Shown here in pieces: positions 15,515 to 50,470 of a stretch of DNA of 64,000 bases (the first letter of the stretch is position 1; every line of letters starts with the position of its first letter). Location of the stretch: positions 62,001 through 126,000 of the IMG/VR virus record IMGVR_UViG_3300006931_000029; one strand, 5' to 3'. The position numbers were made by a program, and so were the translations under genes. A model generated the notes under the pieces. It did no database searches and was not told the DNA's origin. It saw only the letters and a list, made by a program, of their open reading frames with translations.

Positions 15515-16572
15515 GCTGCGACCTCCTCGGCAGGAGCGCCATCAGGAGGAGGTAGGTCGAGGTCCGGAGCAGCCGGACCAGCGGCACCACCTTCTTCCGG
15601 GTTCGCCTCGGCGTCCTCTTCTTCAGTAGAGAAGGTACGCAGAAGGTCACGGATTTCGCGAAGGATTTCGAGAGCTTCTGAAGCTTCTTCGTCGACTTCG
15701 ACGTCTTCGACCTCCGCGAGGATTTCTTTGAAGATTGTGCTGTTCACGTTGCTAACTACGCTCTCGACTCTGCCAAAACGCCTGTCCAGGAACGCGGTGC
15801 CAGACCCGCTGCCGGGTTTTGGCAACTTCTTCTCGTCTTCTCGTTTTGGCTGTTCCTTGGAGGGCTTGGTTTTCGAACCGACAGGTGGCGATGGAACGAC
15901 CATCTTGGGCAGCTTCTCAGGAGCAACAGGTGGCTTGTCGGCTACAGGTTTGCCCGTCTTCGGATCGACCTGAGGGACGTTGGACTTTTGGCCCTTGTCG
16001 TCCTTTTTGTCTCCTGGTTTGTTGATGACGACCGGCTTTCCGGTTGATGTCTGTTGGCGCTGAACATTCTGAACGATCCGCTCGATCTTCTTTGAAACGT
16101 CCACTTTCTCGCCCTCGAAGTGCTCGTACTGCCCGTACACGAAATCTCTCAAGGCGAGCACGTGTTTGCACAGGCCAGGACGATTCTTCGGATTCGTGAT
16201 TCTCGGCGCTCGATTCAGCGCCTGGTTCATGCTGTTGGCGCCAACGACAGAAGAGCCTCGCTGCTTATTCGCCCAGGCCCAGCGGTATCGAAAGTCTGGG
16301 CACGTGCAGTCGACCAGACATTCTACTTTTTCCAGCGGTTTCTGTTTACTCGGCTTGAAAAACTTGATGAATCCCTTGTGACGTTTACCAGTTGTCGAAG
16401 GGAAACTCTTGAAATTGAAGATGTAGTACACGGAATCCGTGTAAGCCTCTAAGTCAAGGGGAGGTCCACGGACCGTCTTCGCTCGCATAACTCGCTTCGG
16501 TTCGGATACCGAAACGAGCTGGTCGAATGTGAGTCGCTCGAGGAGGTTTTTTACTTCGCAGAGGCAAGCCAT
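15511..16572 (-). CDS. SWIM-type Zn-finger protein with Pro/Lys-rich linker and acidic tail
   Basis: DCTCPDFRYR...PGLCKH motif. Confidence 0.7.
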   Translation of the reverse strand: MACLCEVKNLLERLTFDQLVSVSEPKRVMRAKTVRGPPLDLEAYTDSVYYIFNFKSFPSTTGKRHKGFIKFFKPSKQKPLEKVECLVDCTCPDFRYRWAWANKQRGSSVVGANSMNQALNRAPRITNPKNRPGLCKHVLALRDFVYGQYEHFEGEKVDVSKKIERIVQNVQRQQTSTGKPVVINKPGDKKDDKGQKSNVPQVDPKTGKPVADKPPVAPEKLPKMVVPSPPVGSKTKPSKEQPKREDEKKLPKPGSGSGTAFLDRRFGRVESVVSNVNSTIFKEILAEVEDVEVDEEASEALEILREIRDLLRTFSTEEEDAEANPEEGGAAGPAAPDLDLPPPDGAPAEEVAA

Positions 16573-24816: not shown

Positions 24817-26019
24817 ATGAGTGCAACTCGTGCCATTCTCATTTCTCTCGCTCTATCGCTAGCCGGATGCTCGACCGTCCGGAATTGGACAAAGAAGCCT
24901 GTCGCGACTCCTCAGCAAGGTACGCCTGTCGGACAGGCTCAGCAGGGTACCGACTCCGCCACCGCTAAAGCGGACGAAACCAACGCGAAGGTTAGCGAGA
25001 AGGTGAAGCAAATCGGTAGTGAAGTTCGGGCTAACGTTCAAAATGCTCGTGAAGAAAACAAGCTGCAACCGGCAGGTCCTCACACCGATTCGGTCGAAGG
25101 TGAACTATCGCTCGCAGACAAGAAGTTAGTTTCCGTCCCAGTCGACCCCGTTGAATTGGCGTTGGGTCAAGCTAGACGCGAAGCAAACTTGGCCGGAAAG
25201 AGCGAGACGTACCAGAAACTCTACGAACAGTCTTCCACGAAGTCAGACACGCTTGTCAAAGACCTTGGAGCTGCTCAACAGGCTAGAGACGAGGCAATTA
25301 AGGAACGAGACGCCGCTAGAGATCGAGAAAAAACCGTGGTCAAACAGTACCAAGAAACGGTCGAACGAAACGCTACGGAGTACAAGAAGCAATGGGACGA
25401 AGAGCAACTTCGTCGAAACAAAATCGAGACCGACTTGAAAGACGGAATAGCGGCTAAGACCCAGCTGTGGTTGACAATGGGATGCTACGGATTGGGCGTC
25501 GGATGTTTCCTCTTCGCGGCGATTCGAGGCTACATGGCGTTTCAGACCGGAGGCCTTGCGTTGATGGGCGTCGTAAAATCTGCAGGTCTAGCCGTCTTCT
25601 GTGGAGCATGTTTCTTTGCCCTCGGCAAGCTCACGTCCCAGTCGTGGTTCTGGTGGGCGTGCGGGTCGGTTCTCGCTCTTTCCATCGTTTCATTCGTCGT
25701 AGTGCTTGTGGTCGACGCTCACAAAACAAAGAAAGAGCTCGTCGCTAAAAAGGAAATTCAAGACTGCACGGACGACGTTATCGCCGGAGTTGAAGATGTC
25801 AGAGCGACTAGCAAGAATCCTCCTGCGTCTGTCGTCAAAGCGATGCAGGACGAGCTAGGTGCCGGAACAACCCCTGAACAGGCAACGGCCGCCATCAAGG
25901 CGACCCTTCGTACCGTGGTTGATCCCACCATGAAAGAGTGGGTCACGGAAACTGATGGTGTCGCAGAATACGTTGACGCGCGTCGACGGGCTCTTGAACT
26001 CGTGTCGACTAAGCCTTAA
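24817..26019 (+). CDS. lipoprotein with long coiled coil and 3-4 transmembrane helices
   Basis: MSATRAILISLALSLAG-C lipobox, about 170 helical charged residues, then hydrophobic segments. Confidence 0.7.
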   Translation: MSATRAILISLALSLAGCSTVRNWTKKPVATPQQGTPVGQAQQGTDSATAKADETNAKVSEKVKQIGSEVRANVQNAREENKLQPAGPHTDSVEGELSLADKKLVSVPVDPVELALGQARREANLAGKSETYQKLYEQSSTKSDTLVKDLGAAQQARDEAIKERDAARDREKTVVKQYQETVERNATEYKKQWDEEQLRRNKIETDLKDGIAAKTQLWLTMGCYGLGVGCFLFAAIRGYMAFQTGGLALMGVVKSAGLAVFCGACFFALGKLTSQSWFWWACGSVLALSIVSFVVVLVVDAHKTKKELVAKKEIQDCTDDVIAGVEDVRATSKNPPASVVKAMQDELGAGTTPEQATAAIKATLRTVVDPTMKEWVTETDGVAEYVDARRRALELVSTKP

Positions 26020-26674
26020 CGGCGTCGAAAAAGTAGAGGTGGAAGAGCCGACTGTTGCGGATGTCTTCTCCGAAGTAACCGGAAGCGGCGTGGATCATCT
26101 TGGCGTCCCAGATGACGAGTCGGTTGTAGACATTGCCGACCGTATCGACCAAATCCCAGGCGGTAGGATCGACAAGCTTGTCGACGTACGTCAACCGTTC
26201 AAGGTCTTGAACCGTGGAATTCGCAGCCCAAGCGTCGGCTTGGGTCGGCGGCTTCCGTAGCTTCGTTTCCTTCGAGCGATAAAACGACGTGCCGCAGTTC
26301 AGCGGAGCGTCTGGCGTGAGGTAAACCACTGCGGCAAACGACTGGTGGTCGGAATGAAAAACAACCTCGGTTCCGCCTTTGCACCATTGAAACACACCGT
26401 TGTACTTGTGGTCCAACCAGTGAGTGATATTGGCACCGAGTAGCTGTTCGAACCGCTCTTTCAGATACGGGAACAGGTACTTCTGAGCCGTGCGTTCACC
26501 GCGAAAATACTTGTTGTCCGGCTCGTACTGCTGAGCTAACGCGAACGCTCGGACTGCGTCCGGGTTCGTGTAGAAATCGTCGACCACCAGGATGTTCGGA
26601 AGCTTCGTCTCGAACTTTGCGACCTGCTCAGGAACCGTTGCGATGCCGAACTGTGTCAAAAAGTCGTCTTGCAT
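26009..26674 (-). CDS. 2OG-Fe(II) oxygenase-like protein (DUF6445-like)
   Basis: VVDDFYTNPD, HSD, AAVVYLTP..GTSFY, NVYNRLVIW..IHAA and SRLFHLYFF motifs. Confidence 0.75.
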   Translation of the reverse strand: MQDDFLTQFGIATVPEQVAKFETKLPNILVVDDFYTNPDAVRAFALAQQYEPDNKYFRGERTAQKYLFPYLKERFEQLLGANITHWLDHKYNGVFQWCKGGTEVVFHSDHQSFAAVVYLTPDAPLNCGTSFYRSKETKLRKPPTQADAWAANSTVQDLERLTYVDKLVDPTAWDLVDTVGNVYNRLVIWDAKMIHAASGYFGEDIRNSRLFHLYFFDAVKA

Positions 26675-28272: not shown

Positions 28273-29742
28273 TTAGCTGTTCGTTGGGCCGAAGTTCGTC
28301 GGTCCGTTGAGCACCTTGCCGCGCACGTACATCTTCGAGTTGACAACCTTCTTGGCGAAGGAAGTCGCGAAGCCACGCTGGTGCAGGAAGTCCGGGAGGA
28401 CGATGTCCGGCGTGGTGTAGAGCTTCTGGTACTCGGCCAGCACGTAGCCGGTGACGAGGAACTGGTCGCCCTTGTGGCCGATCAGGAACTCGTTGTTCGG
28501 GTAGTGCGGGTCAGCGAAGACCTTCTTGCCGGCCAAGTCACCGATGTAGGTGATGCCCTGCATCTGCGTCGAGTTGCCCTTGCGGACGAACTGTGGCAGC
28601 GTCTCGATGACGGTCGCGAGTTGCAGACCGGCGAGAATCCAGTTACCGGCCGCCATGTTGGTGGCGCCGAAGATCAGGTTCGAACCGGTTGAGATCGCGT
28701 CGATGACCGAGAACTTGTGGGTCTGGTAGCTGACGCCGGTTGGCGCTTGAGCATCCCAGGTGACCACGCCAGCGTCCGCACGAGCGCGGAGATCGAAGAT
28801 CACCTGACGGTGCTTCTGGTACTGGAGGGCGTTCGTGAGCGCGTTCAGCAGGATCGGCTCGGCCTTGATGTTGTACATCGCCTGCAAGTTCTGGTCGGCT
28901 TCCTCGGACCAGACCGCCTTGAGCTTCAGCACCTTCGCCGTCACCGGGGTGGACGAGAGTTTCATCTCGTAACCCATGATGTTGGAGTTACCTTCGGAGT
29001 CGAAGGTGTAGGTGGCCGTCAGCGTTTGTCCGTTTTGGTTGGACGCCGTCGTGACCGTGATCGCGCCGGTCTGGTAGTTGATCGTGCCGCCAGTGATGTT
29101 GGTACCAGCAACGATGTTGCCGTTACCGTCATCCGACGTGGACTCTTGACCGGACGTCACCGTCACGGTGCCAGCGCGAACTGGGCTCCAAGCGAGCGTG
29201 CCAGAAACCGTGCCGCTGCCGATGGTGCCGACTGACTCACCTTCAACGAGCTCGTCAGAGTCCATGAAGCGGTCGGAGGCGCCCTGGAGGGAACGCCACA
29301 TCGGGGAACCGGCAGGAACCGCACCCTTGGCGCGGTCGGTCACGATGTCGACATAAACGATCTGCGAGACCGGACCAGCCATCGGCTGGAGGGCGACAAG
29401 CTGATCGATGACGTCGTTCTCGGACATGTTCGCGAGGACCGGGAAAATCCACTTGTCGAACGTTCCCAGGGCTTGCGTGCGGGTCGACTCGGACATCTGA
29501 CCGAACTTCGACCGGCAGTTTTCCAACATAATCGCGGCGTAGGCGCGCTTATGTTCCGGCATGTGTTCCACGAACTCTTTCCAGCCTTTGGCTTTCCAGA
29601 GTTCGGAATAGGACGCGCCTTCGGCGATTCCTGTTGGGGTTGAAGCGAGGTGGTAGCCCCACTCGAGAACTTCGGAAAACCGTGTGAGACTGCCGCCGTT
29701 TGTCGCCAGCATCGGCCTTCCATCTTGGGTTTTGATGACCAT
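28273..29742 (-). CDS. major capsid protein (T4 gp23-like) with a Gly/Thr-rich beta insertion
   Basis: AIMLEN, VALQPMAGPVSQIVY, VTAKVLKLKAVWSEEADQNL and GYVLAEY motifs; strong codon bias; terminator downstream. Confidence 0.9.
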   Translation of the reverse strand: MVIKTQDGRPMLATNGGSLTRFSEVLEWGYHLASTPTGIAEGASYSELWKAKGWKEFVEHMPEHKRAYAAIMLENCRSKFGQMSESTRTQALGTFDKWIFPVLANMSENDVIDQLVALQPMAGPVSQIVYVDIVTDRAKGAVPAGSPMWRSLQGASDRFMDSDELVEGESVGTIGSGTVSGTLAWSPVRAGTVTVTSGQESTSDDGNGNIVAGTNITGGTINYQTGAITVTTASNQNGQTLTATYTFDSEGNSNIMGYEMKLSSTPVTAKVLKLKAVWSEEADQNLQAMYNIKAEPILLNALTNALQYQKHRQVIFDLRARADAGVVTWDAQAPTGVSYQTHKFSVIDAISTGSNLIFGATNMAAGNWILAGLQLATVIETLPQFVRKGNSTQMQGITYIGDLAGKKVFADPHYPNNEFLIGHKGDQFLVTGYVLAEYQKLYTTPDIVLPDFLHQRGFATSFAKKVVNSKMYVRGKVLNGPTNFGPTNS

Positions 29743-29783
29743 GGTAGGAGGTATTTGACTATTTGTGGTGGTTGATGCTCAGC

Positions 29784-31427
29784 TCAGTTGCGGGAAGCAA
29801 CCTGGCCTTGCGACAGGCGACGAGCCATACCCATGCTTTCTTGCACTGAGTGAGTCACGTCGGTCCTGAGAATCTCGACGCCTTCCGACATAGGACGGGC
29901 AGGCATCTTTGGGTCAACGGCAGCAGGCGCCGGTTTCACGTCGTCAGCAGGCTTTTTGGCCTCTTCAACGACGGGTTTCTTCGGCTCATCAGCGGCCGGT
30001 TTCTTCGCCTCGTCAACCACGGCAGCGGATTTGGCGTCAGCGGCGGCCTTGGCGTCAGCGGCAGGCTTTTTGGCCTCGTCGACGACGGGTTTGCCGTCGG
30101 CACCGACTCCGACTGCGGGCTTTTTCGCCTCGATCGACTCGCGAACAGCGAGGACAGCTTTCGGCGTCTTGGCGTCGACGAGAGCTTTCTTTTGGTCTTC
30201 CGTCATCGACGGGAATTCCAATTCGAGGACGCGAGCACCGAGCTCAGCGACATCCGCTTTGTAGCGGTTGGCCATGATGTCGAGAGCTTCCGTGCAGAAG
30301 CCGTACTTCTGCTCGAACACCTTCGAACCATCGCGTTCGCGACGGGCGGTTTCCATCCAGGCGCGACCGCGCTTGGCGACTGCTTCCGCGATTTCGTTGG
30401 ACTTAACCAACTTGCCGCGGCATTCGGAAAGAACCTTGCGGCTTTCCGAGACGACAGACGTCAGCTTCTTCACAACCGTGAGGAGCTTTGTCTGGTTTTC
30501 ACCGAGCTGCTTGACTTCTTTCCTCGGCGCGTCGAACGCTGCGGTCCAGCCTTCCTCGAGAGTCGTGAGTTCCTTGTGCAGCTGGCCAACTTCCCAAGAC
30601 GCGGAGGCGTTCTCGGAGAGATGCTTGGCAGCAGCGTTGTGGAGCTCAGTCATCCGTTGGAGACCTTCCGCAAACGTGCGGGCGTCGATGGTGGCCGTGT
30701 TAACGGCCTTCAAGGAGCTGATGCTTTCCCTGATTTGTTTGATGTCCATGACGACGTAGTTTTTGGTTTCTGCGATTGGCTTGACGCTCGAAGGCGCTGG
30801 GGCCGAAAGTGGGGTGGCTGTGGCAGCAGCGACCGGAGCGGGTTTGCTCTCAACAGTCTTTTCAGCACGCTGTGGTTTCAGCGCAGCCTGAACAAACGAA
30901 GGGGTAGAGACCACGTCCCAACCTTCGCAAACAAAATCCTCTTGGACGTCATCGACGCCATCCGAGGCAGTAACCAAAGAGCCGTAACCACGGCTCGAAA
31001 CTAGTGGGTCGTATCCTGCCTCAATCAGAGAGCTAAGCTTGTGACCCTCAGGCGTGTCGAGAACCTCGATACACCCTTTGACGTAAACGATCGGGCTATT
31101 CTTCTCGTCCTTGCCCTCGACCAACTGGGCATCAACCGTAATGTGACTGATCGGGCTGCGCAGGTCGACCTTACCATCAGCGGGGTGTTCCAGAAGTCCG
31201 AACGACGCCCGACGCGTCATCAATTGCTTGAGGACGGAACCTTCCGAGAGGTTCTTTTCCCAAACTTTCTTGGAATATCGGCGGCGATTGCCATTGATAC
31301 AGTCGCAAACCGACAGAGTTCCTGGAATACGCTTTGAGGTAAGTCCAGTCTCGGGGTTTTTCGACTCCACGATCGCTGCGCGATCAGGTTTGAAGTCGAA
31401 CGTGTCTTCGAGGAGAATGCGCGGCAC
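29784..31427 (-). CDS. prohead protease (gp21-like) fused to a coiled-coil scaffold
   Basis: INGNRRRYS, GLLEHP, ISH, EVLDTPEG, VSSRGYGS and WDVVSTPS motifs, followed by a long helical region and VxEAKKPAAD repeats. Confidence 0.88.
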   Translation of the reverse strand: MPRILLEDTFDFKPDRAAIVESKNPETGLTSKRIPGTLSVCDCINGNRRRYSKKVWEKNLSEGSVLKQLMTRRASFGLLEHPADGKVDLRSPISHITVDAQLVEGKDEKNSPIVYVKGCIEVLDTPEGHKLSSLIEAGYDPLVSSRGYGSLVTASDGVDDVQEDFVCEGWDVVSTPSFVQAALKPQRAEKTVESKPAPVAAATATPLSAPAPSSVKPIAETKNYVVMDIKQIRESISSLKAVNTATIDARTFAEGLQRMTELHNAAAKHLSENASASWEVGQLHKELTTLEEGWTAAFDAPRKEVKQLGENQTKLLTVVKKLTSVVSESRKVLSECRGKLVKSNEIAEAVAKRGRAWMETARRERDGSKVFEQKYGFCTEALDIMANRYKADVAELGARVLELEFPSMTEDQKKALVDAKTPKAVLAVRESIEAKKPAVGVGADGKPVVDEAKKPAADAKAAADAKSAAVVDEAKKPAADEPKKPVVEEAKKPADDVKPAPAAVDPKMPARPMSEGVEILRTDVTHSVQESMGMARRLSQGQVASRN

Positions 31428-33524: not shown

Positions 33525-34212
33525 TCGCTTCGACACCGTAAACCACGCAGCTAACGTCTTGCGTGATCGGTTTTCCGAAGATGACCTGCAGCCGTTTATC
33601 AAGAATGAACGACGGCGGAATTTGGTAAGGACGCGCGAAGATATACCACTCCTCGTGCTGAGGAGCTGGATAGTAGAAACTGATCGTTGTACCAGCCGTG
33701 ATGAACTGGCTGTAGGGACGTAGATCGACTGGATTTGGGTTCTCTACTGTAGGGGCTAAGTCAAAGATCGCGATGTCGTCGGCGAAGTTTGGCGTGGTTC
33801 CTTTTATTTCGAACGGCGCAATCTTCAGGTACGATAGCTTGACTTTCTTGAATTTCCCTTCAGGTTCGGCCACGGATCGGCCTAGTTCAAAGCCAAACAG
33901 CGCGTTTGGCTTTGTATCTCTTGGGAGACCGATAGTGATTCGAGCCTGAGCTTCCGGCATAATCACCTGCTTGCCCATCTCTTCCCAGAACATGTCGACT
34001 AGAGAATCTTCCAAAGTCTCTTCGTCAACGTTGTTGATGTCGTAGATCGTACTTTGAGAGACGTCTTTGAACTCGCCGAACAGGCTGCGGAACCGGCGGG
34101 CACGCTCCATGTGCTTGAGAGCTTTCACGCCCTCGTAGCCTTTCGACATTTCGAGCAACTTCAACGTTGCGCGCTCAGCGAAGAGGCTCCGGTCTTTCGG
34201 CAGCGTGGTCAC
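33508..34212 (-). CDS. hypothetical protein
   Basis: 234-aa ORF coupled to the oxygenase gene. Confidence 0.55.
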   Translation of the reverse strand: MTTLPKDRSLFAERATLKLLEMSKGYEGVKALKHMERARRFRSLFGEFKDVSQSTIYDINNVDEETLEDSLVDMFWEEMGKQVIMPEAQARITIGLPRDTKPNALFGFELGRSVAEPEGKFKKVKLSYLKIAPFEIKGTTPNFADDIAIFDLAPTVENPNPVDLRPYSQFITAGTTISFYYPAPQHEEWYIFARPYQIPPSFILDKRLQVIFGKPITQDVSCVVYGVEAISLKT

Positions 34213-34892
34213 TTCGGGCGGTTTTGCCAGGATGCCCAGTGAAACGGAGCTTTCTCGTGTTCAGGCCGGTCCGAGGTGTAGTAGTAGAGAGCGAGGCTAA
34301 GCCGCTGTTCGGCTTTCAACGGAAGCGGATGGCCGTGGAACGCGTTGTCGGTGATCGTGAACACGACCATTCGATTGGCAATCGGAGCGATCTTGTGGAC
34401 GCAGGACGACATGTCACGCTTCCATAGCTCAAGATAGCCGTTCCAACTCTCTTCCCACGTCGGGTTGAGATACAGCAGCACGTTCAGTCGCCGGTGCAAG
34501 TTCAACTTCGGATGAACGTTGAAGTCGGCATGAACTTCGAGATGGCCGCCTCGAAGAGTCTTGTGGATACCGCCGCCGAGAAGAGTCGGGTCGATCAGCA
34601 ATTCCTGAATGCCCGTCAAATCCTCCAGGAACTTGACCATTTCCTTGCTGTAAAAGAAAGACACCGCTTCTAGCGTGTGCGGGGGCATCTGATTCGGATC
34701 GGCTATCCAGCGCTTGTGCATCTGGTGCCCATGGTCGTCACGAAGCCACTTCGCGTCTGGAATCGCCGTGATTTCGGTAGCGATCTTACTAATCGTCTCC
34801 GGCTCAAAGACGCCATCCAACACGATGTTGGGATACGGAGCAGCCGCAAGATACTTTTCCCTTAGTTCAAGTCCTTTGTCGATGTAGTTCAT
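34209..34892 (-). CDS. 2OG-Fe(II) oxygenase (prolyl-hydroxylase-like family)
   Basis: GGGIH, HLEVHADFN, RRLNVLLYLN, GYLELW, FHGHP and RLSLALYYY motifs (HxD...H, RxS). Confidence 0.9.
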   Translation of the reverse strand: MNYIDKGLELREKYLAAAPYPNIVLDGVFEPETISKIATEITAIPDAKWLRDDHGHQMHKRWIADPNQMPPHTLEAVSFFYSKEMVKFLEDLTGIQELLIDPTLLGGGIHKTLRGGHLEVHADFNVHPKLNLHRRLNVLLYLNPTWEESWNGYLELWKRDMSSCVHKIAPIANRMVVFTITDNAFHGHPLPLKAEQRLSLALYYYTSDRPEHEKAPFHWASWQNRPK

Positions 34893-35209
34893 GACGGCGG
34901 CGTCCTCACCCCAATTTGGTAACTCACGGCAAGCTTAGCAGCCGCTTCCGGCATCGTGTTGATTTCAGAGCGCGCCATGATAACGTGGTAGCAGCAACGA
35001 TAAACAAGAATGGCGATCCACACAGCAAGGACTAGCAAGACGCCAAGCATCACCATGACGAGATTCTGCCACGTTGGCGTGCCGAAAGCCCACCAGAAAA
35101 ACGTGGTGATAACCGTGGCGATGATCGAACCAGAGGCGAAGAAGTCAATCGGCCGAATGAAGCCGACTTGAAACAACGCTCTGGTCTGCTCGTCCAAGAG
35201 CGGTTTCAT
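34889..35209 (-). CDS. small membrane protein (2 TM)
   Basis: Two hydrophobic segments; holin-like size but no direct evidence of function. Confidence 0.55.
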   Translation of the reverse strand: MKPLLDEQTRALFQVGFIRPIDFFASGSIIATVITTFFWWAFGTPTWQNLVMVMLGVLLVLAVWIAILVYRCCYHVIMARSEINTMPEAAAKLAVSYQIGVRTPPS

Positions 35210-36696
35210 TCCTTGGTGAATGTCTCGTCGGCGTGCTGGTCGATAACCTTGACAGCTTCCTCGGCCACCATCTCAGGCGGCAAATAGAAGGAGCGCACCT
35301 TGCGAACGAGAATCTTCTTCAGCGCCTCACTCGGCTTGCAGAAACGAAGCTCGAATGGTTCGCCCTCTTTGCCGATATAGAAGACGCATTTCGCCTTGCC
35401 GTCTTTGTGGGAGTAGTAGACGTCGGAACCAAACTTGATTTGTTTGTAGTGGTCCCGAAGGTGGACAAGAAGAGCTTCGTCACGTTCTGTCGGCGTGAAT
35501 GGGCCGGATGAAGGGGCGGCGGGAGCTTTTTGCTGTTGTTCGGGAGTGGGCGGTGTGTCTGACGAGGAGGCTTTTGGCATGACAGGATCGGTTGAGGGTT
35601 GTTGATCTGTGAGAACAGGAGTCCTCACATTCCGAGAACCCAATAGCTTTGGGCTCAGGGTAATCTCGCCTAGGCCGTAGTTCATTGCCTCCGTCTGACA
35701 TGCGGTCTTGAGGCCGCAGGACATGCATGTGCGATGATTCCGCTGGAAAAGGACACCGAAGCAGGACAAGCGATCCCCTTCGATGACCGGCGGCTTGGCA
35801 CCGACAACAGTCAGAAGCTTCTCGACGTCGGTTGACACCTTCTCCAGCTGGTCACGAGAACAAATCGTAAAGAGCCGGGCAACGATGACCTTGTCGGTGG
35901 AGCGTGGAACCTGAACCCCGAAGATGTTTTCAAGCGTGGCGAGCGCCGAGTTGAAGCGCACATCCTCGGGTTTGTTGTTCATGATCTTCTCCATGTATTT
36001 CGTCTTGATTGATTGATGCACGGTAGCGAAGAGTTCCTGGTCGATACCAAGACCCTCTGCCATGTGCTGGTGGCTGAGTTTCACCGAAAGCGGCTCGTTC
36101 TTCTTTCTGCCACGCGTGGTGCCCAAGTACGAGAACATGTATGCTCCCGGGTTTGGGTCTGCGAGCTGAGCTAGGACGAGTAGTTCCAGCGGAGTGAGGA
36201 AGACTTTAAGATCGTCCAACAGCTCCTGATCAAAAGAACAAGACGTGGAATCCTCCTTGCCGGCAATCTGAAGGTGGATGTCTGGATCGTCGAGGCTGAC
36301 ATCCGGTTTGATATTGACGCTGGTCGGATCGTTACGATCTGGAGCCCTGTGGCCAGTCCGCTTGATCGTGAAACGATGACGTTGAACAATGCCACGAACG
36401 TGGTTGTTCATCGACGTCTTTGCGACCTTAAAAAATTCAACTCGATTTCTGGCTCTAGTGAGCCAACCTGCTTTTATTACGTCAACCACTTTCTTCAAGC
36501 ATTCGGCTCGAAGATCGCTGAAGTTGAGAGCGAAACAGCTGTTGTCCGTGTACATCGTAGCCACAGAGACAGCAACTTTCAGGAGGTCTTCCATCATATC
36601 CTCCAAGCGGAGGAGGGGTTGACCGATGGCCATAGCCAATCTTGAAGATTCGACTTCGGCCGTTCTTAGCAATAGCGTAGCATCATTGACGTCCAT
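35206..36696 (-). CDS. sigma70-like factor (region 2 + region 4) with extra Zn-finger and C-terminal domains
   Basis: DLRAECLKKVV..EFFKVAKTSMNNHVRGIVQRHR resembles region 2, and LLDDLKVFLTPLELLVL..SHQHMAEGLGIDQE resembles the region 4 HTH. Start MDVND preferred. Confidence 0.6.
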   Translation of the reverse strand: MDVNDATLLLRTAEVESSRLAMAIGQPLLRLEDMMEDLLKVAVSVATMYTDNSCFALNFSDLRAECLKKVVDVIKAGWLTRARNRVEFFKVAKTSMNNHVRGIVQRHRFTIKRTGHRAPDRNDPTSVNIKPDVSLDDPDIHLQIAGKEDSTSCSFDQELLDDLKVFLTPLELLVLAQLADPNPGAYMFSYLGTTRGRKKNEPLSVKLSHQHMAEGLGIDQELFATVHQSIKTKYMEKIMNNKPEDVRFNSALATLENIFGVQVPRSTDKVIVARLFTICSRDQLEKVSTDVEKLLTVVGAKPPVIEGDRLSCFGVLFQRNHRTCMSCGLKTACQTEAMNYGLGEITLSPKLLGSRNVRTPVLTDQQPSTDPVMPKASSSDTPPTPEQQQKAPAAPSSGPFTPTERDEALLVHLRDHYKQIKFGSDVYYSHKDGKAKCVFYIGKEGEPFELRFCKPSEALKKILVRKVRSFYLPPEMVAEEAVKVIDQHADETFTKE

Positions 36697-36775
36697 GTGT
36701 TCCAGAGGGGGTTGACAGAGTTGACAGAAGCAGGAGACAGAAAAACTAGACAGAGAGGTGCGACCGAAGGAGAAC

Positions 36776-37792
36776 TTACTCGTGCTCTCCGAAGACTTCA
36801 TGCTCTCCTGATCGCCGCGAGTCGACCGTGGTTCGCATTTCGTCCCAAACTTCTTGAGCGCTCTTCGTTGTGCGCCCGCGTCGCTTCGCTACTTGCTCGA
36901 CAGAGGAAGGGTCCTTGTCCGATGCTTCAAGTTCGCGATAAAGGTCGTAGCTGTCACGCAGCTTTGCGAGACTCACTGGCGTTGGGATTTTGATCCGCTG
37001 CCCACCGAGTGTCATCACAATACGCTTGAATTGATCCCACGTGATGATGTCCAGAAGGTCTGGAATGTGGTCGTACGAGTGAGCGTGGCGGACGAGGTCC
37101 TGCTCAGTGAATGGCACGTGGACCATCTCAAGCATTTCGTTGCGCATCGCAAACAACGACCAGTTGTAGAAAAACTTCGATAGATCGATGCTGATCCCGT
37201 AGCTGTACGACGCAGAAAGGATCGCCCTTTTCTTGTCATGGGACTCCATCAAGATTGATTCAAGAAGGAAGCGTATGGCGCCGATTTCTTGTTTTGAACC
37301 CCATCGAACAGTGATGTGGTCCAACTTACCTCGGAACGAAACAGCCGCTTCGTGTTCAAAGGCACTATGATCCTCGACACCGTGATATTTTTCCAACGAT
37401 TCTCCGGTGGAATGAATTCTAGTGCGATAAGTGCTAACCTTAACGACTTCACCTCGGAAAACGTTTTTCGCGCACTTGGAGAACCAAGAGAAAAGCTTGC
37501 CCTTCTCAGGACGCCAAGCGATGAGCCATTTGACGATCTTCTCCTGTGCGGCCAAGACGAGTGTGTCGAGGTCGACCGTTGAGTCAAAGCCTTCGTACTG
37601 AGCAAACCGCTCGAACATCGGCGTCGAGCCTTTGACGATTTCGTCCAGCAGGTCAATAGCTTTCTCGTGCTCACCTGCTTCAGTCAGACGTTTCCATTCG
37701 ATTGCCATCCCCGTGAGTCGAGTCGCATTGAAAATGTGCTCGCCCTCTTTTGCGGGTTCTTCGGCTGGAAGGTCTGTCTTTTTCGCGGACAT
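36776..37792 (-). CDS. sigma region-2 (gp55-like) protein with a C-terminal Mor-like domain
   Basis: DTLVLAAQEKIVKWLIAWRPEKGKLFSWFSKCAKN resembles sigma2, and IVMTLGGQRIKIP..SVEQVAKRRGRTTKSAQEV resembles the Mor/C family. Confidence 0.65.
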   Translation of the reverse strand: MSAKKTDLPAEEPAKEGEHIFNATRLTGMAIEWKRLTEAGEHEKAIDLLDEIVKGSTPMFERFAQYEGFDSTVDLDTLVLAAQEKIVKWLIAWRPEKGKLFSWFSKCAKNVFRGEVVKVSTYRTRIHSTGESLEKYHGVEDHSAFEHEAAVSFRGKLDHITVRWGSKQEIGAIRFLLESILMESHDKKRAILSASYSYGISIDLSKFFYNWSLFAMRNEMLEMVHVPFTEQDLVRHAHSYDHIPDLLDIITWDQFKRIVMTLGGQRIKIPTPVSLAKLRDSYDLYRELEASDKDPSSVEQVAKRRGRTTKSAQEVWDEMRTTVDSRRSGEHEVFGEHE

Positions 37793-37935: not shown

Positions 37936-37999
37936 TTCTAACCGAAAAGAAACACAAAAAGGCGAACAAGATGTTTGCTCCCTATTTGCTGTGAGGAAT

Positions 38000-38611
38000 T
38001 TATGTCTCGACAGTGACCTTCTGAAGCTTCTTCACGATCGCGTCGAATGCAGGTTGATGCTTGCCAAGCTCAGGATCGATGGCGATCAACTGACCTGCCG
38101 AAAGCATCAGCGTATAAGGAACGACCGGGGTCAACTCCACCGCGCCGTTGAGACCAAGTAAATCCTGAAGTTTGCGAATATCTTTGGAAATCTCCAGTCC
38201 GGAAACTGCCTTGGTGTCCATCTTGGCCGTCAAGTCATGGGCCAACGACAGCATGCCGTGGATGGTTTGCCGGACGACCTTGGCACCAGCTGCAGACGTG
38301 GTAACTGCCTTGGCAGGATTGTTGGTCGTGGCAGGTCCAAGGCCGAGGACTTCTCTCGCGGCCAACAAGATTTCTGACTTGCCGATTTCCAACGCGTCTT
38401 TGCCGTCCTTGTGAAGCTTCACGGCTACGTTGAAAACCTCCACGGGAAAGGTTACCACCTCACCTGAGCGTTTCTTCACGCCTACCGTCTTGGAACCCAG
38501 CTTTTCTTTGATCGCTGGCTCCTTGTCCATGTAATAAAGGACTGCGTTGATTCTGACCGGCGTCGGGACGTCTTTGTCCGTCGCTGGGTCGTAAGTTTTG
38601 GGATCGCTCAT
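38000..38611 (-). CDS. hypothetical (probable early) protein
   Basis: 203 aa downstream of a sigma70-like promoter. Confidence 0.6.
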   Translation of the reverse strand: MSDPKTYDPATDKDVPTPVRINAVLYYMDKEPAIKEKLGSKTVGVKKRSGEVVTFPVEVFNVAVKLHKDGKDALEIGKSEILLAAREVLGLGPATTNNPAKAVTTSAAGAKVVRQTIHGMLSLAHDLTAKMDTKAVSGLEISKDIRKLQDLLGLNGAVELTPVVPYTLMLSAGQLIAIDPELGKHQPAFDAIVKKLQKVTVET

Positions 38612-38622
38612 CGGACGTGGTG

Positions 38623-38651
38623 ATTTTAGGTTACGGATTGGAAATTGTAAA
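38623..38651 (-). promoter_or_regulatory. sigma70-like promoter
   Basis: TTTACA-N17-TAAAAT, 11 nt before the ATG. Confidence 0.65.
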
Positions 38652-50444: not shown

Positions 50445-50470
50445 GTTCTTAATTACACAACCTTTTCCAC

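What the first reader, a model, noticed from the sequence alone, without database searches (positions are those of the whole stretch)
35206..37792. Two adjacent, differently built sigma-like factors that could match the two non-sigma70 motif classes
Seen: 36776..37792 has a sigma2/gp55-like segment, and 35206..36696 has sigma2- and sigma4-like segments plus extra domains. The window independently shows three upstream motif classes: host-type TTTACA-N16/17-TAnnnT before small accessory genes, GTTCTN before replication genes, and TANWTAV before virion genes. Established: SPO1 uses successive sigma factors (gp28, gp33/34), and T4 uses gp55. Inference: this is a three-tier early/middle/late cascade in a T4-like virion background, run on -10-only promoters. 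Which factor reads which motif cannot be told from sequence.
Basis: inference. Interest (0 to 1): 0.8.

Follow-up and report, generated by a model that had tools for sequence, protein, structure and literature searches.

The report
Paired divergent sigma-like genes in soil phage
A large uncultured soil phage with T4-type head genes carries two neighbouring, very divergent relatives of bacterial sigma factors, kept together in all 24 related viral contigs examined, that probably redirect the host RNA polymerase to phage promoters; how they divide the work is untested.

Summary
Both ORFs are real and conserved: A is 36776..37792(-), 338 aa; B is 35206..36696(-), 496 aa. Each family has about 250 clusters, and A sits directly upstream of B in all 24 related IMG/VR loci.

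A has a sigma region-2 domain. Evidence: Pfam Sigma70_r2 in 13 of 48 relatives, Foldseek hits almost all from RNA polymerase/sigma entries, and hhalign above shuffles. Its C-terminus is a Mor/MuC-like helix-turn-helix, not a gp55 match.

B's N-terminus matches sigma regions 1.2-2.2 (hhalign probability 89%, E 2e-6). Its proposed sigma-4 part did not exceed shuffled controls. It also has an invariant four-cysteine motif and an unassigned C-terminal domain.

All three upstream patterns are enriched. GTTCT and TANWTAV lie only 7-18 nt from start codons, so they may be leaderless-type promoters or translation signals.

A conserved TTTTTGTTTACA element precedes the orf203-A-B unit in four genomes. 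The two factors are therefore probably made together and early, not as successive tiers.

Verdict: a new variant of phage sigma factors. The cascade is plausible but untested.

The parts
36776..37792 (-). Gene A, 338 aa. A sigma-like factor built as sigma-2 domain + helical middle + Mor/MuC-like helix-turn-helix.
   Evidence: ORF. 250 homologues of about 335 aa. AlphaFold2 mean pLDDT 78. Nearly all top-50 Foldseek PDB hits are from RNA polymerase/sigma entries.
37409..37669 (-). A residues ~42-128: sigma region 2-like helices, with the conserved aromatic stretch F101-S-W103-F104.
   Evidence: Pfam Sigma70_r2 in 13 of 48 family members, best E 5e-4. hhalign against an E. coli sigma set: probability 31%, E 5e-4, score 25.5 against a shuffled maximum of 20.3. 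Invariant residues listed.
36827..37066 (-). A residues ~243-322: Mor/MuC-like helix-turn-helix domain (LGGQRIKIP...).
   Evidence: Pfam Mor in 31 of 48 members, best E 8.3e-5; the window's own protein scores 12.8 bits, E 0.12. phrog_836 'late transcriptional activator', E 0.004. hhalign against Mu Mor/C scores 21.1 against a shuffled maximum of 17.8.
37730..37744 (-). A N-terminal short motif GEHIF (residues 17-21).
   Evidence: The pattern [GS]E[HN]x0-1[IVLMF][FYW] matches near the N-terminus in 79 of 110 full-length homologues (72 as GEHIF) and never internally. F21 is invariant.
36791..36808 (-). A C-terminal tail motif GEHEVF (residues 329-334), followed by acidic residues.
   Evidence: The strict pattern matches in 53 of 110 homologues; tails printed also show GEY/GEF variants. 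G329 and E330 are invariant.
36697..36775 (-). A-B spacer of 79 nt, non-coding in this subclade. It begins TAA-GTTCTC and holds a 9-bp tandem repeat TCTGTCAAC x2 (36711..36728) 15 nt upstream of B's ATG.
   Evidence: Alignments with L111, L112 and L113. CTGTCAAC occurs only 4 times in the window, 2 of them here.
35206..36696 (-). Gene B, 496 aa. Sigma-2-like N-terminus, helix-turn-helix-like region, helical domain, four-cysteine motif, disordered linker, alpha/beta C-terminal domain.
   Evidence: ORF. 249 clusters at 50% identity. AlphaFold2 mean pLDDT 70. Start codon settled.
36352..36606 (-). B residues ~31-115: sigma region 1.2/2.1-2.4-like (VAxSVAxxYTDxSC..L..DL.AEC..K ... R.EFFK..KT..NNH...VQRHRFT.KRTG).
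   Evidence: hhalign against an E. coli sigma set: probability 89%, E 2e-6, score 36 against a shuffled maximum of 13.8. Whole-protein comparison: probability 51%, score 39.3 against a shuffled maximum of 19.7. A is the best non-self hit of B's sigma-2 model among 646 window ORFs, E 0.089.
35977..36246 (-). B residues ~151-240: proposed sigma-4-like helix-turn-helix (LTPLELLVL ... HMAEGLGIDQELF...). Unproven.
   Evidence: Helices in the model. A lax hhalign alignment places it on sigma-70 region 4, but its own score of 12.8 does not exceed the shuffled maximum of 12.9. Weak HTH_10 and HTH_Crp_2 hits in 2 members each.
35698..35763 (-). B C312-x11-C324-x2-C327-x5-C333: four invariant cysteines, a presumed metal (Zn or Fe-S) site.
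   Evidence: Invariant in 77 sequences. No significant PDB or Pfam match.
35209..35499 (-). B residues ~400-496: alpha/beta C-terminal domain of unknown function.
   Evidence: pLDDT 77-89, helix-strands-helix. A BFVD hit named 'DUF5655 domain-containing protein' (E 0.077, probability 0.96) might correspond to it, but the aligned region was not reported. PDB and Atlas searches uninformative.
38623..38651 (-). Host-type promoter-like site TTTACA-N17-TAAAAT upstream of orf203. It is the nearest class-1 site upstream of A and B.
   Evidence: The TTTTTGTTTACA core is conserved at the same place in L111, L112 and L113.
38000..38611 (-). orf203: conserved unknown gene between uvsX and A. It is the first gene of the putative orf203-A-B unit.
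   Evidence: tblastn synteny. Gene calls in L111-L113. No family hit.
37952..37992 (-). Hairpin followed by a U-rich tract between orf203 and A: a weak terminator- or attenuator-like element.
   Evidence: Free energy -14.7 kcal/mol, z = -2.3. The stem and T-run are conserved in L111.

Best explanation
A and B are two very divergent phage members of the sigma-70 superfamily. They form a fixed two-gene module in a clade of soil and rhizosphere phages with genomes of about 200-255 kb and T4-type head and replication genes.

Each keeps a sigma-2 domain, the part of a sigma factor that binds the beta-prime clamp helices of core RNA polymerase and reads and melts the -10 element. Each would therefore displace the host primary sigma and retarget host RNA polymerase to phage promoters.

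They differ in their DNA-reading or regulatory ends. A carries a Mor/MuC-type helix-turn-helix where sigma-4 would be, plus short conserved motifs at both termini. B carries a putative helix-turn-helix, an invariant four-cysteine metal site and a C-terminal alpha/beta domain, much like ECF sigmas with built-in regulatory extensions.

The module lies downstream of a conserved host-type TTTTTGTTTACA promoter element. It sits at the boundary between the recombination/replication genes and the head genes, on the same strand. The likely order is: host holoenzyme makes A and B together, and they then switch on the later classes, with GTTCT-type and TAnnTA-type sites as candidates.

Shown here: homology of both N-terminal domains to sigma region 2, the Mor-like domain, the conserved synteny, and the motif enrichments. 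Inferred: binding to RNA polymerase, co-transcription, timing, and which sites each factor reads.
For: A: nearly all of the top 50 Foldseek PDB hits are from RNA polymerase/sigma entries (best 8hkc_E, sigma-32, E 0.025, about 300 aligned columns). Sigma70_r2 is hit by 13 of 48 relatives and Mor by 31 of 48. hhalign to sigma region 2 exceeds shuffles. hhalign to Mu Mor/C exceeds shuffles. One relative is named a 'sigma24 family protein' by JGI.

B: hhalign to sigma regions 1.2-2.2 gives probability 89%, E 2e-6, score 36 against a shuffled maximum of 13.8. BFVD hits include a phage 'RNA polymerase subunit sigma' (E 0.03) and Sigma70-ECF models. The Atlas returns viral Sigma70_r2 clusters at 0.82, a weak lead. 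Three different sigma-factor PHROGs are each hit by a single member.

The pair: A-then-B adjacency in 24 of 24 loci, down to 31% identity. A3-versus-A1 hhalign aligns 156 columns, E 0.004.

Expression: the class-1 element is conserved upstream of orf203 in four genomes, and in L113 A abuts orf204.

Precedent: T4-like jumbo phages encode minimal and fuller sigma factors (PMC7824862). ECF sigmas with cysteine-rich or other C-terminal extensions are known (PMC8999054, PMC9023288, PMC3107203).
Against: Neither window protein reaches any curated Pfam, NCBIfam or PHROG sigma threshold. Profile searches of PDB sequences found no sigma.

Foldseek E-values are weak: none is below 0.001 and TM-scores are about 0.2. 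For B against the PDB they are mixed with noise.

The sigma-4 likeness of both proteins is not above shuffled controls. B has few aromatic residues in its region 2.3 equivalent.

A weak terminator-like hairpin lies between orf203 and A. There is no transcript evidence: the runs found are metagenome contigs only.

The rest of the 225-kb genome was not examined. A canonical gp55/gp33/gp45 set may exist there.
Confidence: 0.55

Rival explanations
1. A and B work together at one promoter class as a two-part specificity factor. This would resemble T4 gp55+gp33, SPO1 gp33+gp34 or B. subtilis SigO-RsoA. One partner would supply -10 recognition and the other a flap- or DNA-binding or regulatory module.
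For: The adjacency is obligate in 24 of 24 loci. In distant relatives B's reading frame starts inside A's 3' end, suggesting coupled translation. The two families are of similar size. Known split or paired phage sigmas: PMC2988020, PMC12867686 (discussion), PMC13401047.
Against: Both proteins carry a sigma-2-like domain, and two of these would compete for the same beta-prime site. In the window's subclade the genes are separated by a 79-nt non-coding spacer with its own conserved repeat. No contact between them was tested.
Confidence: 0.2
2. B is not an initiation factor. It would be an RNA polymerase-binding regulator that uses a sigma-2-like domain to occupy core polymerase or block the host sigma, with the four-cysteine site as a metal or redox switch.
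For: Only regions 1.2-2.2, the core-binding part, match strongly. The sigma-4 match is not significant. Four cysteines are invariant, and large extra domains follow.
Against: The helix after region 2.2 keeps an ECF-like pattern (R.EFFK..KT..NNH, with N98 at least 90% conserved) where sigmas read the -10 element. A helix-turn-helix-like segment follows in the sigma-4 position.
Confidence: 0.12
3. A is essentially a Mor/MuC-type activator that works with the host sigma-70 holoenzyme. Its N-terminal helices would be a dimerisation or docking domain that merely resembles sigma-2.
For: The Mor match is the most frequent family hit (31 of 48). PHROG labels the match 'late transcriptional activator'. 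The motifs at both termini mirror the positions of the clamp-binding motifs of Mor/MuC (PMC12867686).
Against: Foldseek aligns about 300 of 338 residues to whole sigma chains. Sigma70_r2 is hit by 13 relatives. The aromatic F-x-W-F stretch typical of region 2.3 is invariant or nearly so. Mor and C are about 130-140 aa and lack such a domain.
Confidence: 0.1
4. The GTTCT and TANWTAV words are not promoter elements read by A or B. They would be start-codon-proximal leader or translation signals, partly reflecting stop codons and compact gene junctions, in a phage whose genes mostly lack Shine-Dalgarno sequences.
For: CGTTCT starts 13-18 nt, and TANWTAV mostly 10-11 nt, upstream of start codons. 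For TANWTAV this leaves too little room for a normal -10-to-start distance. Its last three letters are TAA or TAG, often in frame. Shine-Dalgarno motifs are rare in the window, and capsid-gene leaders in more than 50 relatives are A/C-rich with no conserved TANWTAV.
Against: The GTTCT spacing fits a -10 element of leaderless or near-leaderless mRNAs. GTTCT recurs before gene A and other long ORFs in distant relatives. It marks mostly DNA-metabolism genes, as a temporal class would.
Confidence: 0.35

Closest known systems
T4 late sigma gp55 (with gp33 and the gp45 clamp)
   Same: A phage factor with a sigma-2-type domain that retargets host RNA polymerase to promoters without a -35 element. The gene sits among the replication and recombination genes of a phage with Gp23-type capsid genes. 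A has a conserved hydrophobic/acidic C-terminal tail, where gp55 and gp33 carry their clamp-binding tails (from my knowledge of T4; PMC2988020, PMC7892883).
   Different: No detectable sequence similarity to gp55. A is 338 aa with three domains against 185 aa for gp55. No gp33 or gp45 was identified in the window. The late-promoter word TATAAATA is not the enriched motif.
Mor/MuC late-gene activators of phage Mu (Pfam PF08765)
   Same: A's C-terminal 80 residues match the family, including the GG-x-x-x-x-IP turn and the helix-turn-helix. Short conserved motifs lie at both protein termini, where MuC carries its two clamp-binding motifs (PMC12867686).
   Different: Mor and C are about 130-140 aa and act with sigma-70. 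A has a 200-residue sigma-like N-terminal part in place of the Mor dimerisation domain. A's motifs (GEHIF and GEHxIF/Y) are not the E. coli clamp consensus.
ECF (group 4) sigma factors with C-terminal regulatory extensions (e.g. CorE/ECF44, OrbS, ECF41/42)
   Same: B is laid out as sigma-2, linker, helix-turn-helix, then an extension with invariant cysteines. In these ECFs such extensions act as an on-board sensor in place of an anti-sigma (PMC8999054, PMC9023288, PMC3107203).
   Different: B does not hit the ECF models (1 of 24 relatives at E 0.18). Its best profile match is to regions 1.2-2.2 of group 1-3 sigmas. The extension is about 250 residues with two further domains. It is phage-encoded.
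SPO1 sigma cascade (gp28, then gp33/gp34)
   Same: Phage-encoded sigma-like factors replace the host sigma. Genes 33 and 34 are adjacent and act together (my knowledge; PMC13401047).
   Different: No sequence relation was tested or seen. Here both neighbours carry a sigma-2-like domain, and they appear to be made together rather than in succession.
Sigma factors of T4-like ('group 2') jumbo phages as surveyed by Iyer et al. 2021
   Same: That survey reports that all T4-like jumbo phages encode sigma factors of two kinds, minimal and fuller RpoD-like, plus gp33 (PMC7824862).
   Different: The A and B families have no tblastn match in 50,697 cultured-phage records. Their architectures (sigma-2 + Mor; sigma-2 + four cysteines + C-terminal domain) are not described there.

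Membership tests
Sigma-70 superfamily | Sigma-2 domain (regions 2.1-2.4) recognisable by sequence profile | tested here: met
   B: hhalign probability 89%, E 2e-6, score 36 against a shuffled maximum of 13.8. A: probability 31%, E 5e-4, score 25.5 against 20.3, and Sigma70_r2 in 13 of 48 relatives.
Sigma-70 superfamily | The window proteins themselves pass curated family thresholds (Pfam Sigma70_r2/r4, NCBIfam) | tested here: not met
   No sigma family was reported for either protein at E <= 1.
Sigma-70 superfamily | Sigma-4 helix-turn-helix (region 4.2) for -35 and flap contact | tested here: inconclusive
   B 145-245 scores 12.8 against a shuffled maximum of 12.9. A 228-338 scores 12.4 against 13.1. 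The best local alignments do fall on regions 4.1/4.2, and Foldseek aligns the whole of A to sigma chains.
Sigma-70 superfamily | Overall sigma fold by structure comparison | tested here: inconclusive
   A: nearly all top-50 PDB hits are from RNA polymerase/sigma entries, but E >= 0.025 and TM is about 0.2. B: sigma chains are scattered among noise, E > 0.8; BFVD gives a phage sigma at E 0.03. Whole multi-domain models were searched; per-domain searches were not possible.
Sigma-70 superfamily | Binds core RNA polymerase and confers promoter-specific initiation | not testable with these tools
   Needs biochemistry or a multimer prediction with the host's beta-prime and beta subunits. The host is unknown.
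T4 gp55 family | Sequence homology to gp55 | tested here: not met
   hhalign of A1 and A2 against T4 gp55: probability 0.3% or less. phmmer of gp55 against all window ORFs found nothing. The test used the single T4 gp55 sequence, not a family profile.
T4 gp55 family | Minimal architecture: about 185 aa, sigma-2 only | tested here: not met
   A is 338 aa with three helical domains. B is 496 aa.
T4 gp55 family | Dependence on a sliding clamp through a C-terminal tail | not testable with these tools
   A has a conserved C-terminal tail motif. No clamp gene was found in the window.
Mor/MuC family (PF08765) | C-terminal GG-x4-IP turn plus helix-turn-helix matching the family profile | tested here: met
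   31 of 48 A-family members match, best E 8.3e-5, and two carry a precomputed PF08765 hit. hhalign to Mor/C scores 21.1 against a shuffled maximum of 17.8. The window protein alone is below the cut-off (12.8 bits against 24.9).
Mor/MuC family (PF08765) | Small (~130-140 aa) activator with an N-terminal dimerisation domain that acts with sigma-70 | tested here: not met
   A's first 230 residues are sigma-like, not Mor-like: the hhalign alignment covers only Mor 55-117.
ECF sigma (group 4) | Match to ECF sigma models; compact sigma-2/sigma-4 architecture | tested here: not met
   Sigma70_ECF is hit by 1 of 24 B relatives at E 0.18. hhalign of A3 against RpoE+FecI gives probability 0.4%.
WhiB-like Fe-S proteins (considered for B's cysteine motif) | C-xn-C-x2-C-x5-C pattern together with homology to Wbl proteins | tested here: not met
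   The spacing pattern is present (C312, C324, C327, C333). No Whib family is among those shown for 24 or 77 relatives (one search lists only the top 25 of 57). PDB phmmer returned only weak zinc-ribbon-like eL37 matches.

The most novel reading that the evidence does not exclude
Protein A is a natural chimera of the two known kinds of clamp-dependent late-transcription factor. It has a gp55-like sigma-2 domain fused to a Mor/MuC-type DNA-binding domain, flanked by N- and C-terminal short motifs (GEHIF ... GE[HY]x[IVL][FY] + acidic) that would dock a sliding clamp. It would then couple late transcription to replication in a single polypeptide. B would be a second, metal-gated sigma for another class. 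That would link the T4 and Mu mechanisms, which the 2026 Mu paper describes as having protein players that are 'nothing alike'.
Probability: 0.15. Interest if true: 0.8.

Novelty: new variant of a known kind. Interest (0 to 1): 0.55.

Why it matters
Phage-encoded sigma factors are the classic way of timing phage gene expression, but known examples come from a few cultured phages.

Here, two unannotated families of about 250 sequence clusters each turn out to be sigma-like. They always occur as a pair in a widespread clade of large soil and rhizosphere phages. Their architectures have not been described: a sigma-2 domain joined to a Mor/MuC domain, and a sigma-2 domain followed by an invariant four-cysteine site and an extra C-terminal domain.

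If confirmed, this would:
- give names to hundreds of 'hypothetical proteins';
- offer a defined system (two factors, three short motif classes) for studying promoter recognition without a -35 element in an uncultured lineage;
- possibly connect the T4 gp55 and Mu C routes of replication-coupled late transcription.

Tried and rejected
- Direct family scans of both proteins (Pfam, NCBIfam, PHROGs) found no sigma family.
- tblastn and blastn against 50,697 cultured phage records found no match for A, B or the DNA.
- Profile searches of PDB sequences with A1, A2 and A3 found nothing relevant.
- hhalign against the single T4 gp55 sequence found nothing.
- I first thought B starts at the upstream ATG at 36801, overlapping A, with an embedded GGAGA Shine-Dalgarno. 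I rejected this for the window's subclade after aligning L111: the ATG is lost and the spacer has frame-breaking indels. It still seems to hold for distant relatives.
- The WhiB-like reading of the four-cysteine motif rests on spacing alone and has no homology support.
- The Atlas search on B's C-terminal half gave only noise-level scores.
- The RpoE homologue search returned only near-identical RpoE sequences among the 120 listed, useless for a diverse ECF profile. I used a six-sigma E. coli set instead.
- Public runs holding the locus are soil and rhizosphere metagenome contigs. Laying them gave presence only, with no transcript ends.
- No late-promoter word conserved upstream of capsid-gene orthologues stood out by eye. 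The leaders are A/C-rich, with a recurrent CCAAGTAA / CCATCAACC of unknown meaning.
- CTGTCAAC is not a general motif; it is local to the A-B spacer.
- No third sigma-like ORF and no gp55 homologue were found in the window.


Full report
**What is there**

The stretch holds two minus-strand ORFs: A at 36776..37792 (338 aa) and B at 35206..36696 (496 aa). B's ORF is open up to an ATG at 36801, which would give 531 aa.

The window comes from IMG/VR contig IMGVR_UViG_3300006931_000029, 224,954 bp. The same sequence is held at low depth by several rhizosphere and soil metagenomes.

The neighbourhood is a distant T4-type phage:
- Gp23-family major capsid protein and gp21-type prohead protease
- tail sheath, family-A DNA polymerase, NAD-dependent ligase and an SbcC-like nuclease
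- DnaB-like helicase, UvsX/RecA-like recombinase and a 2OG-Fe(II) oxygenase
- an Fpg/Nei-like glycosylase

The nearest cultured capsid proteins are only about 30% identical: Bacillus phages HSE3 and SP-15, and Listeria phage LIS04. A, B and their DNA have no match in 50,697 cultured-phage records.

**Both genes are real and form a fixed pair**

A has at least 250 homologues of very uniform length, about 335 aa, on contigs up to 255 kb. A profile of B finds 249 clusters at 50% identity, mostly 470-600 aa.

In all 24 IMG/VR loci that encode a B relative, down to 31% identity, an A relative lies immediately upstream. The order orf552 - uvsX - (orf203) - A - B is kept. Three closer relatives fetched with their gene calls show the same order.

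**Start of B**

In many distant relatives B's frame stays open into A's 3' end. A conserved peptide block (..LF..F.DP.LRPPVLEEM..) lies upstream of any internal start, so there B probably starts inside A.

In the window's own subclade this does not hold. In the 84%-identical relative L111 the ATG corresponding to 36801 is CAC-G. The 79 nt between A's stop and the ATG at 36696 carry indels of 2, 1 and 2 nt, and conservation resumes at CTCTGGAACACATGGA.

The spacer begins TAA-GTTCTC. It holds a tandem TCTGTCAAC-TCTGTCAAC 15 nt upstream of the ATG, and relatives keep one or two CTGT[CT]AAC copies there. This word is otherwise no more frequent in the window than chance. It looks like a local control site.

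**Protein A**

Direct scans give only a weak Mor hit (E 0.12) and phrog_836 'late transcriptional activator' (E 0.004) at residues 243-322. Scanning 48 family members one by one gives Mor in 31 (best E 8.3e-5) and Sigma70_r2 in 13 (best E 5e-4). One relative is named 'sigma24 family protein' by JGI.

The AlphaFold2 model (mean pLDDT 78) is all-helical, in three blocks separated by low-confidence linkers.

Foldseek against the PDB returns chains from RNA polymerase/sigma-factor entries for all but one or two of the 50 listed hits (sigma-32, SigA, SigB, sigma-28, ECF SigL/SigH, RpoE-NepR). Typically 250-350 columns are aligned. E-values are weak (best 0.025) and TM-scores low, as expected when domain orientations differ.

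Against a small alignment of E. coli RpoD, RpoS, RpoH, FliA, RpoE and FecI, A's residues 70-104 align with regions 2.1-2.3 (..VDLDTLVLAAQEKIVKW......GKLFSWF against ..[17 protein letters not shown]......YKFSTY). Probability is 31%, E 5e-4, score 25.5 against a maximum of 20.3 in 40 column shuffles. F101, W103 and F104 are invariant or nearly so.

The C-terminal block aligns with Mu Mor residues 55-117, including LGGQRIKIP against LGGGQVYIP. The score is 21.1 against a shuffled maximum of 17.8. Its match to sigma region 4.2 is not above shuffles.

T4 gp55 shows no similarity. So A is sigma-2 plus a helical middle plus a Mor/MuC-like helix-turn-helix. 'Sigma-2-like' is right; 'gp55-like' is not shown.

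**Protein B**

No library gives a family for the window protein. Per-member scans of 24 and 77 relatives give only scattered weak hits:
- Sigma70_ECF once (E 0.18) and Sigma70_r2 once (E 0.027)
- three different sigma PHROGs, once each
- phrog_13400, of unknown function, in 27 of 77

Profile-profile comparison is clearer. The 77-sequence alignment against the E. coli sigma set gives probability 51%, E 1.5e-4, score 39.3. Sixty column shuffles reach at most 19.7. Restricted to B residues 25-125 against sigma regions 1.2-2.x, it gives probability 89%, E 2e-6, score 36 against a shuffled maximum of 13.8. The aligned text is the classic region 2.1/2.2 signature: [30 protein letters not shown] against VAVSVATMYTDNSCFALNFSDLRAECLKKV.

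The following helix (R.EFFK..KT..NNH...VQRHRFT.KRTG) keeps the spacing of regions 2.3/2.4. F89 is invariant and N98 at least 90% conserved.

With a lax alignment threshold the match runs on to sigma-70 region 4, placing LTPLELLVL on LTAREAKVL and HMAEGLGIDQELF.. on region 4.2. Taken alone, that part scores 12.8 against a shuffled maximum of 12.9, which is not significant.

The model (mean pLDDT 70) shows, in order:
- a helical N-domain
- a disordered linker (125-153)
- helices from 151 to 298
- a lower-confidence stretch holding the cysteines
- a disordered linker (346-398)
- a confident alpha/beta C-terminal domain

Foldseek against the PDB is inconclusive: sigma chains are mixed with noise and every E-value is above 0.8. 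Against BFVD the best hits are an unnamed 197-aa viral protein (E 2.4e-3), a phage 'RNA polymerase subunit sigma' (E 0.03), a DUF5655 protein (E 0.077) and two Sigma70-ECF models (E 0.5-0.7).

C312, C324, C327 and C333 (C-x11-C-x2-C-x5-C) are invariant in 77 sequences. No homology explains them, and a WhiB-like reading rests on spacing only.

A and B may be distant paralogues. A3 against A1 aligns 156 columns (E 0.004, probability 8%). A is the best non-self hit of B's sigma-2 model among 646 window ORFs (E 0.089). No third sigma-like ORF is present in the window.

**The three motif classes**

(1) TTTACA-N16-18-TANNNT occurs 5 times against 0.22 expected, and none of 100 shuffles reached 5. 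The core is really TTTGTTTACA preceded by a T/A-rich run.

(2) CGTTCT is found in 11 of 70 upstream 60-nt regions against 1.55 expected. It starts 13-18 nt upstream of the start codon of eight genes, where my estimate from its window-wide frequency is about 0.17. The eight are:
- the SbcC-like nuclease
- the ligase
- the helicase
- the Fpg-like glycosylase
- a methyltransferase-like protein
- a DUF6445 protein
- two genes of unknown function

GTTCT[TA]A-type words also precede gene A and other long ORFs in distant relatives.

(3) TANWTAV occurs in 16 of 70 upstream regions. Composition-preserving shuffles give 4.7 +/- 2.0, and none of 500 reached 16. Most copies lie in the tail-gene block.

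The positions matter. TANWTAV mostly begins 10-11 nt upstream of the ATG. It ends in TAA or TAG, so it leaves 3-4 nt before the start codon. That is too close for an ordinary -10 element. Upstream of more than 50 capsid-gene orthologues there is no such word; the leaders are A/C-rich and lack a Shine-Dalgarno sequence.

GTTCT ends 7-12 nt upstream of the ATG. That would fit a -10 element of leaderless or near-leaderless mRNAs, but equally a leader signal. So the enrichments are real and the promoter reading is open.

**How A and B are probably expressed**

No class-1 site lies directly upstream of A. The nearest is TTTACA-N17-TAAAAT upstream of orf203 (38623..38651). Its TTTTTGTTTACA core is conserved at that place in L111, L112 and L113, while the -10 part is not.

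In L113, A starts one base after orf204 ends. In the window and L111, a conserved hairpin plus T-run (-14.7 kcal/mol, z = -2.3) and a conserved AAGTATCTAACC block lie between orf203 and A. A variant, TATCTAG, recurs upstream of A in L112 and L003.

The simplest reading is that orf203, A and B form one unit driven by a host-type promoter, with some attenuation. They would be early products that then act on later classes. They sit on the same strand, between the recombination genes and the head genes. This is inference; no transcript data could be obtained.

**Comparison with known systems**

Phage sigmas that replace the host sigma are well known: T4 gp55/gp33/gp45 (PMC2988020, PMC7892883) and SPO1 (PMC13401047). 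T4-like jumbo phages are reported to carry minimal and fuller sigma types (PMC7824862). ECF sigmas with cysteine-rich or other C-terminal extensions are also known (PMC8999054, PMC9023288, PMC3107203). The kind is therefore known.

What is new:
- two unannotated families
- their obligate pairing
- A's sigma-2/Mor chimera
- B's four-cysteine site and C-terminal domain

A's conserved terminal motifs are GEHIF near the N-terminus and GE[HY]x[IVL][FY] followed by acidic residues at the C-terminus; the strict pattern matched in 79 and 53 of 110 homologues, and never internally. They sit where MuC carries its two clamp-binding motifs (PMC12867686) and where, from my knowledge of T4, gp55 and gp33 carry their clamp-binding tails. 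That prompts, but does not show, a clamp-coupled mechanism.

**Limits**

- Only 64 kb of a 225-kb genome was examined.
- The host is unknown. One 5.9-kb fragment binned in a Verrucomicrobiota genome is a weak hint.
- Structure searches used whole multi-domain models.
- The sigma template alignment had only six sequences.
- Gene starts for the motif statistics come from a simple longest-ORF caller, curated by hand.

Noticed in passing
window 28273..29784 and loci L032-L099 (upstream of the capsid gene): The 35-45-nt leaders of the capsid gene in more than 50 related phages are A/C-rich (caacaacaa...) with no Shine-Dalgarno sequence. Many share CCAAGTAA (end of the upstream gene) followed by (G)CCATCAACC. 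Canonical GGAG/GAGG at the right distance is rare across the window; many starts are preceded by ..CACC, ..TACC or ..TTCC.
   Followed up: partly
window 36711..36728 (-): A 9-bp tandem repeat TCTGTCAAC x2 lies 15 nt upstream of B's start. One or two CTGT[CT]AAC copies are kept in L111 and L112, with a looser TGTCAAG in L113, and the word is not enriched elsewhere in the window. It may be an operator or autoregulatory site for B.
   Followed up: partly
window upstream regions generally (e.g. 29743..29760, 15515..15560): CCTCC/CCTCCT, identical to the usual anti-Shine-Dalgarno rather than complementary to it, is enriched in the 60 nt upstream of starts (10 regions against 2.9 expected for CCTCC; 6 against 0.9 for CCTCCT). 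Unexplained.
   Followed up: no
L112:1-4880: In a 66-75%-identical relative, the DNA polymerase gene carries Intein_splicing/LAGLIDADG hits. The 805-aa product at the helicase position carries Hint/homing-endonuclease hits. The window's copies are uninterrupted.
   Followed up: no
window 50445..50470: A divergent 26-nt intergenic region holds GTTCTTAATTAC on one strand and TAATTAAGAAC on the other. It combines the GTTCT and TAATTA words in a near-palindrome between two divergent genes.
   Followed up: no
B relatives P0122, P0124, P0126 (alignment A2, columns ~184-244): Three close relatives of B carry an insertion of about 55 residues in the disordered linker after the sigma-2-like domain. The linker therefore tolerates large insertions.
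   Followed up: no
P0123 (B relative, 84% identical): JGI names this B homologue '6-pyruvoyl-tetrahydropterin synthase'. Nothing in the sequence or the Pfam scans supports that name, so it looks like an annotation error.
   Followed up: no
L115 (JBEKZM010000197.1): The only hit for the A family in 185,579 species genomes is a 5.9-kb contig binned in a Verrucomicrobiota genome from the SPRUCE peatland. This is a weak hint at the host phylum, or a binning artefact.
   Followed up: no
window 34209..34892 and 26009..26674: A 2OG-Fe(II) oxygenase lies two genes downstream of B. A DUF6445 protein sits further on, and a similarly sized DUF6445 gene is also called in L111.
   Followed up: no
window 38000..38611 (orf203) and 34889..35209 (orf106): Two small conserved genes of unknown function flank the A-B pair in many relatives. 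orf203 is the first gene after the conserved TTTTTGTTTACA element. Either could be a partner such as an anti-sigma or co-activator; this was not examined.
   Followed up: no
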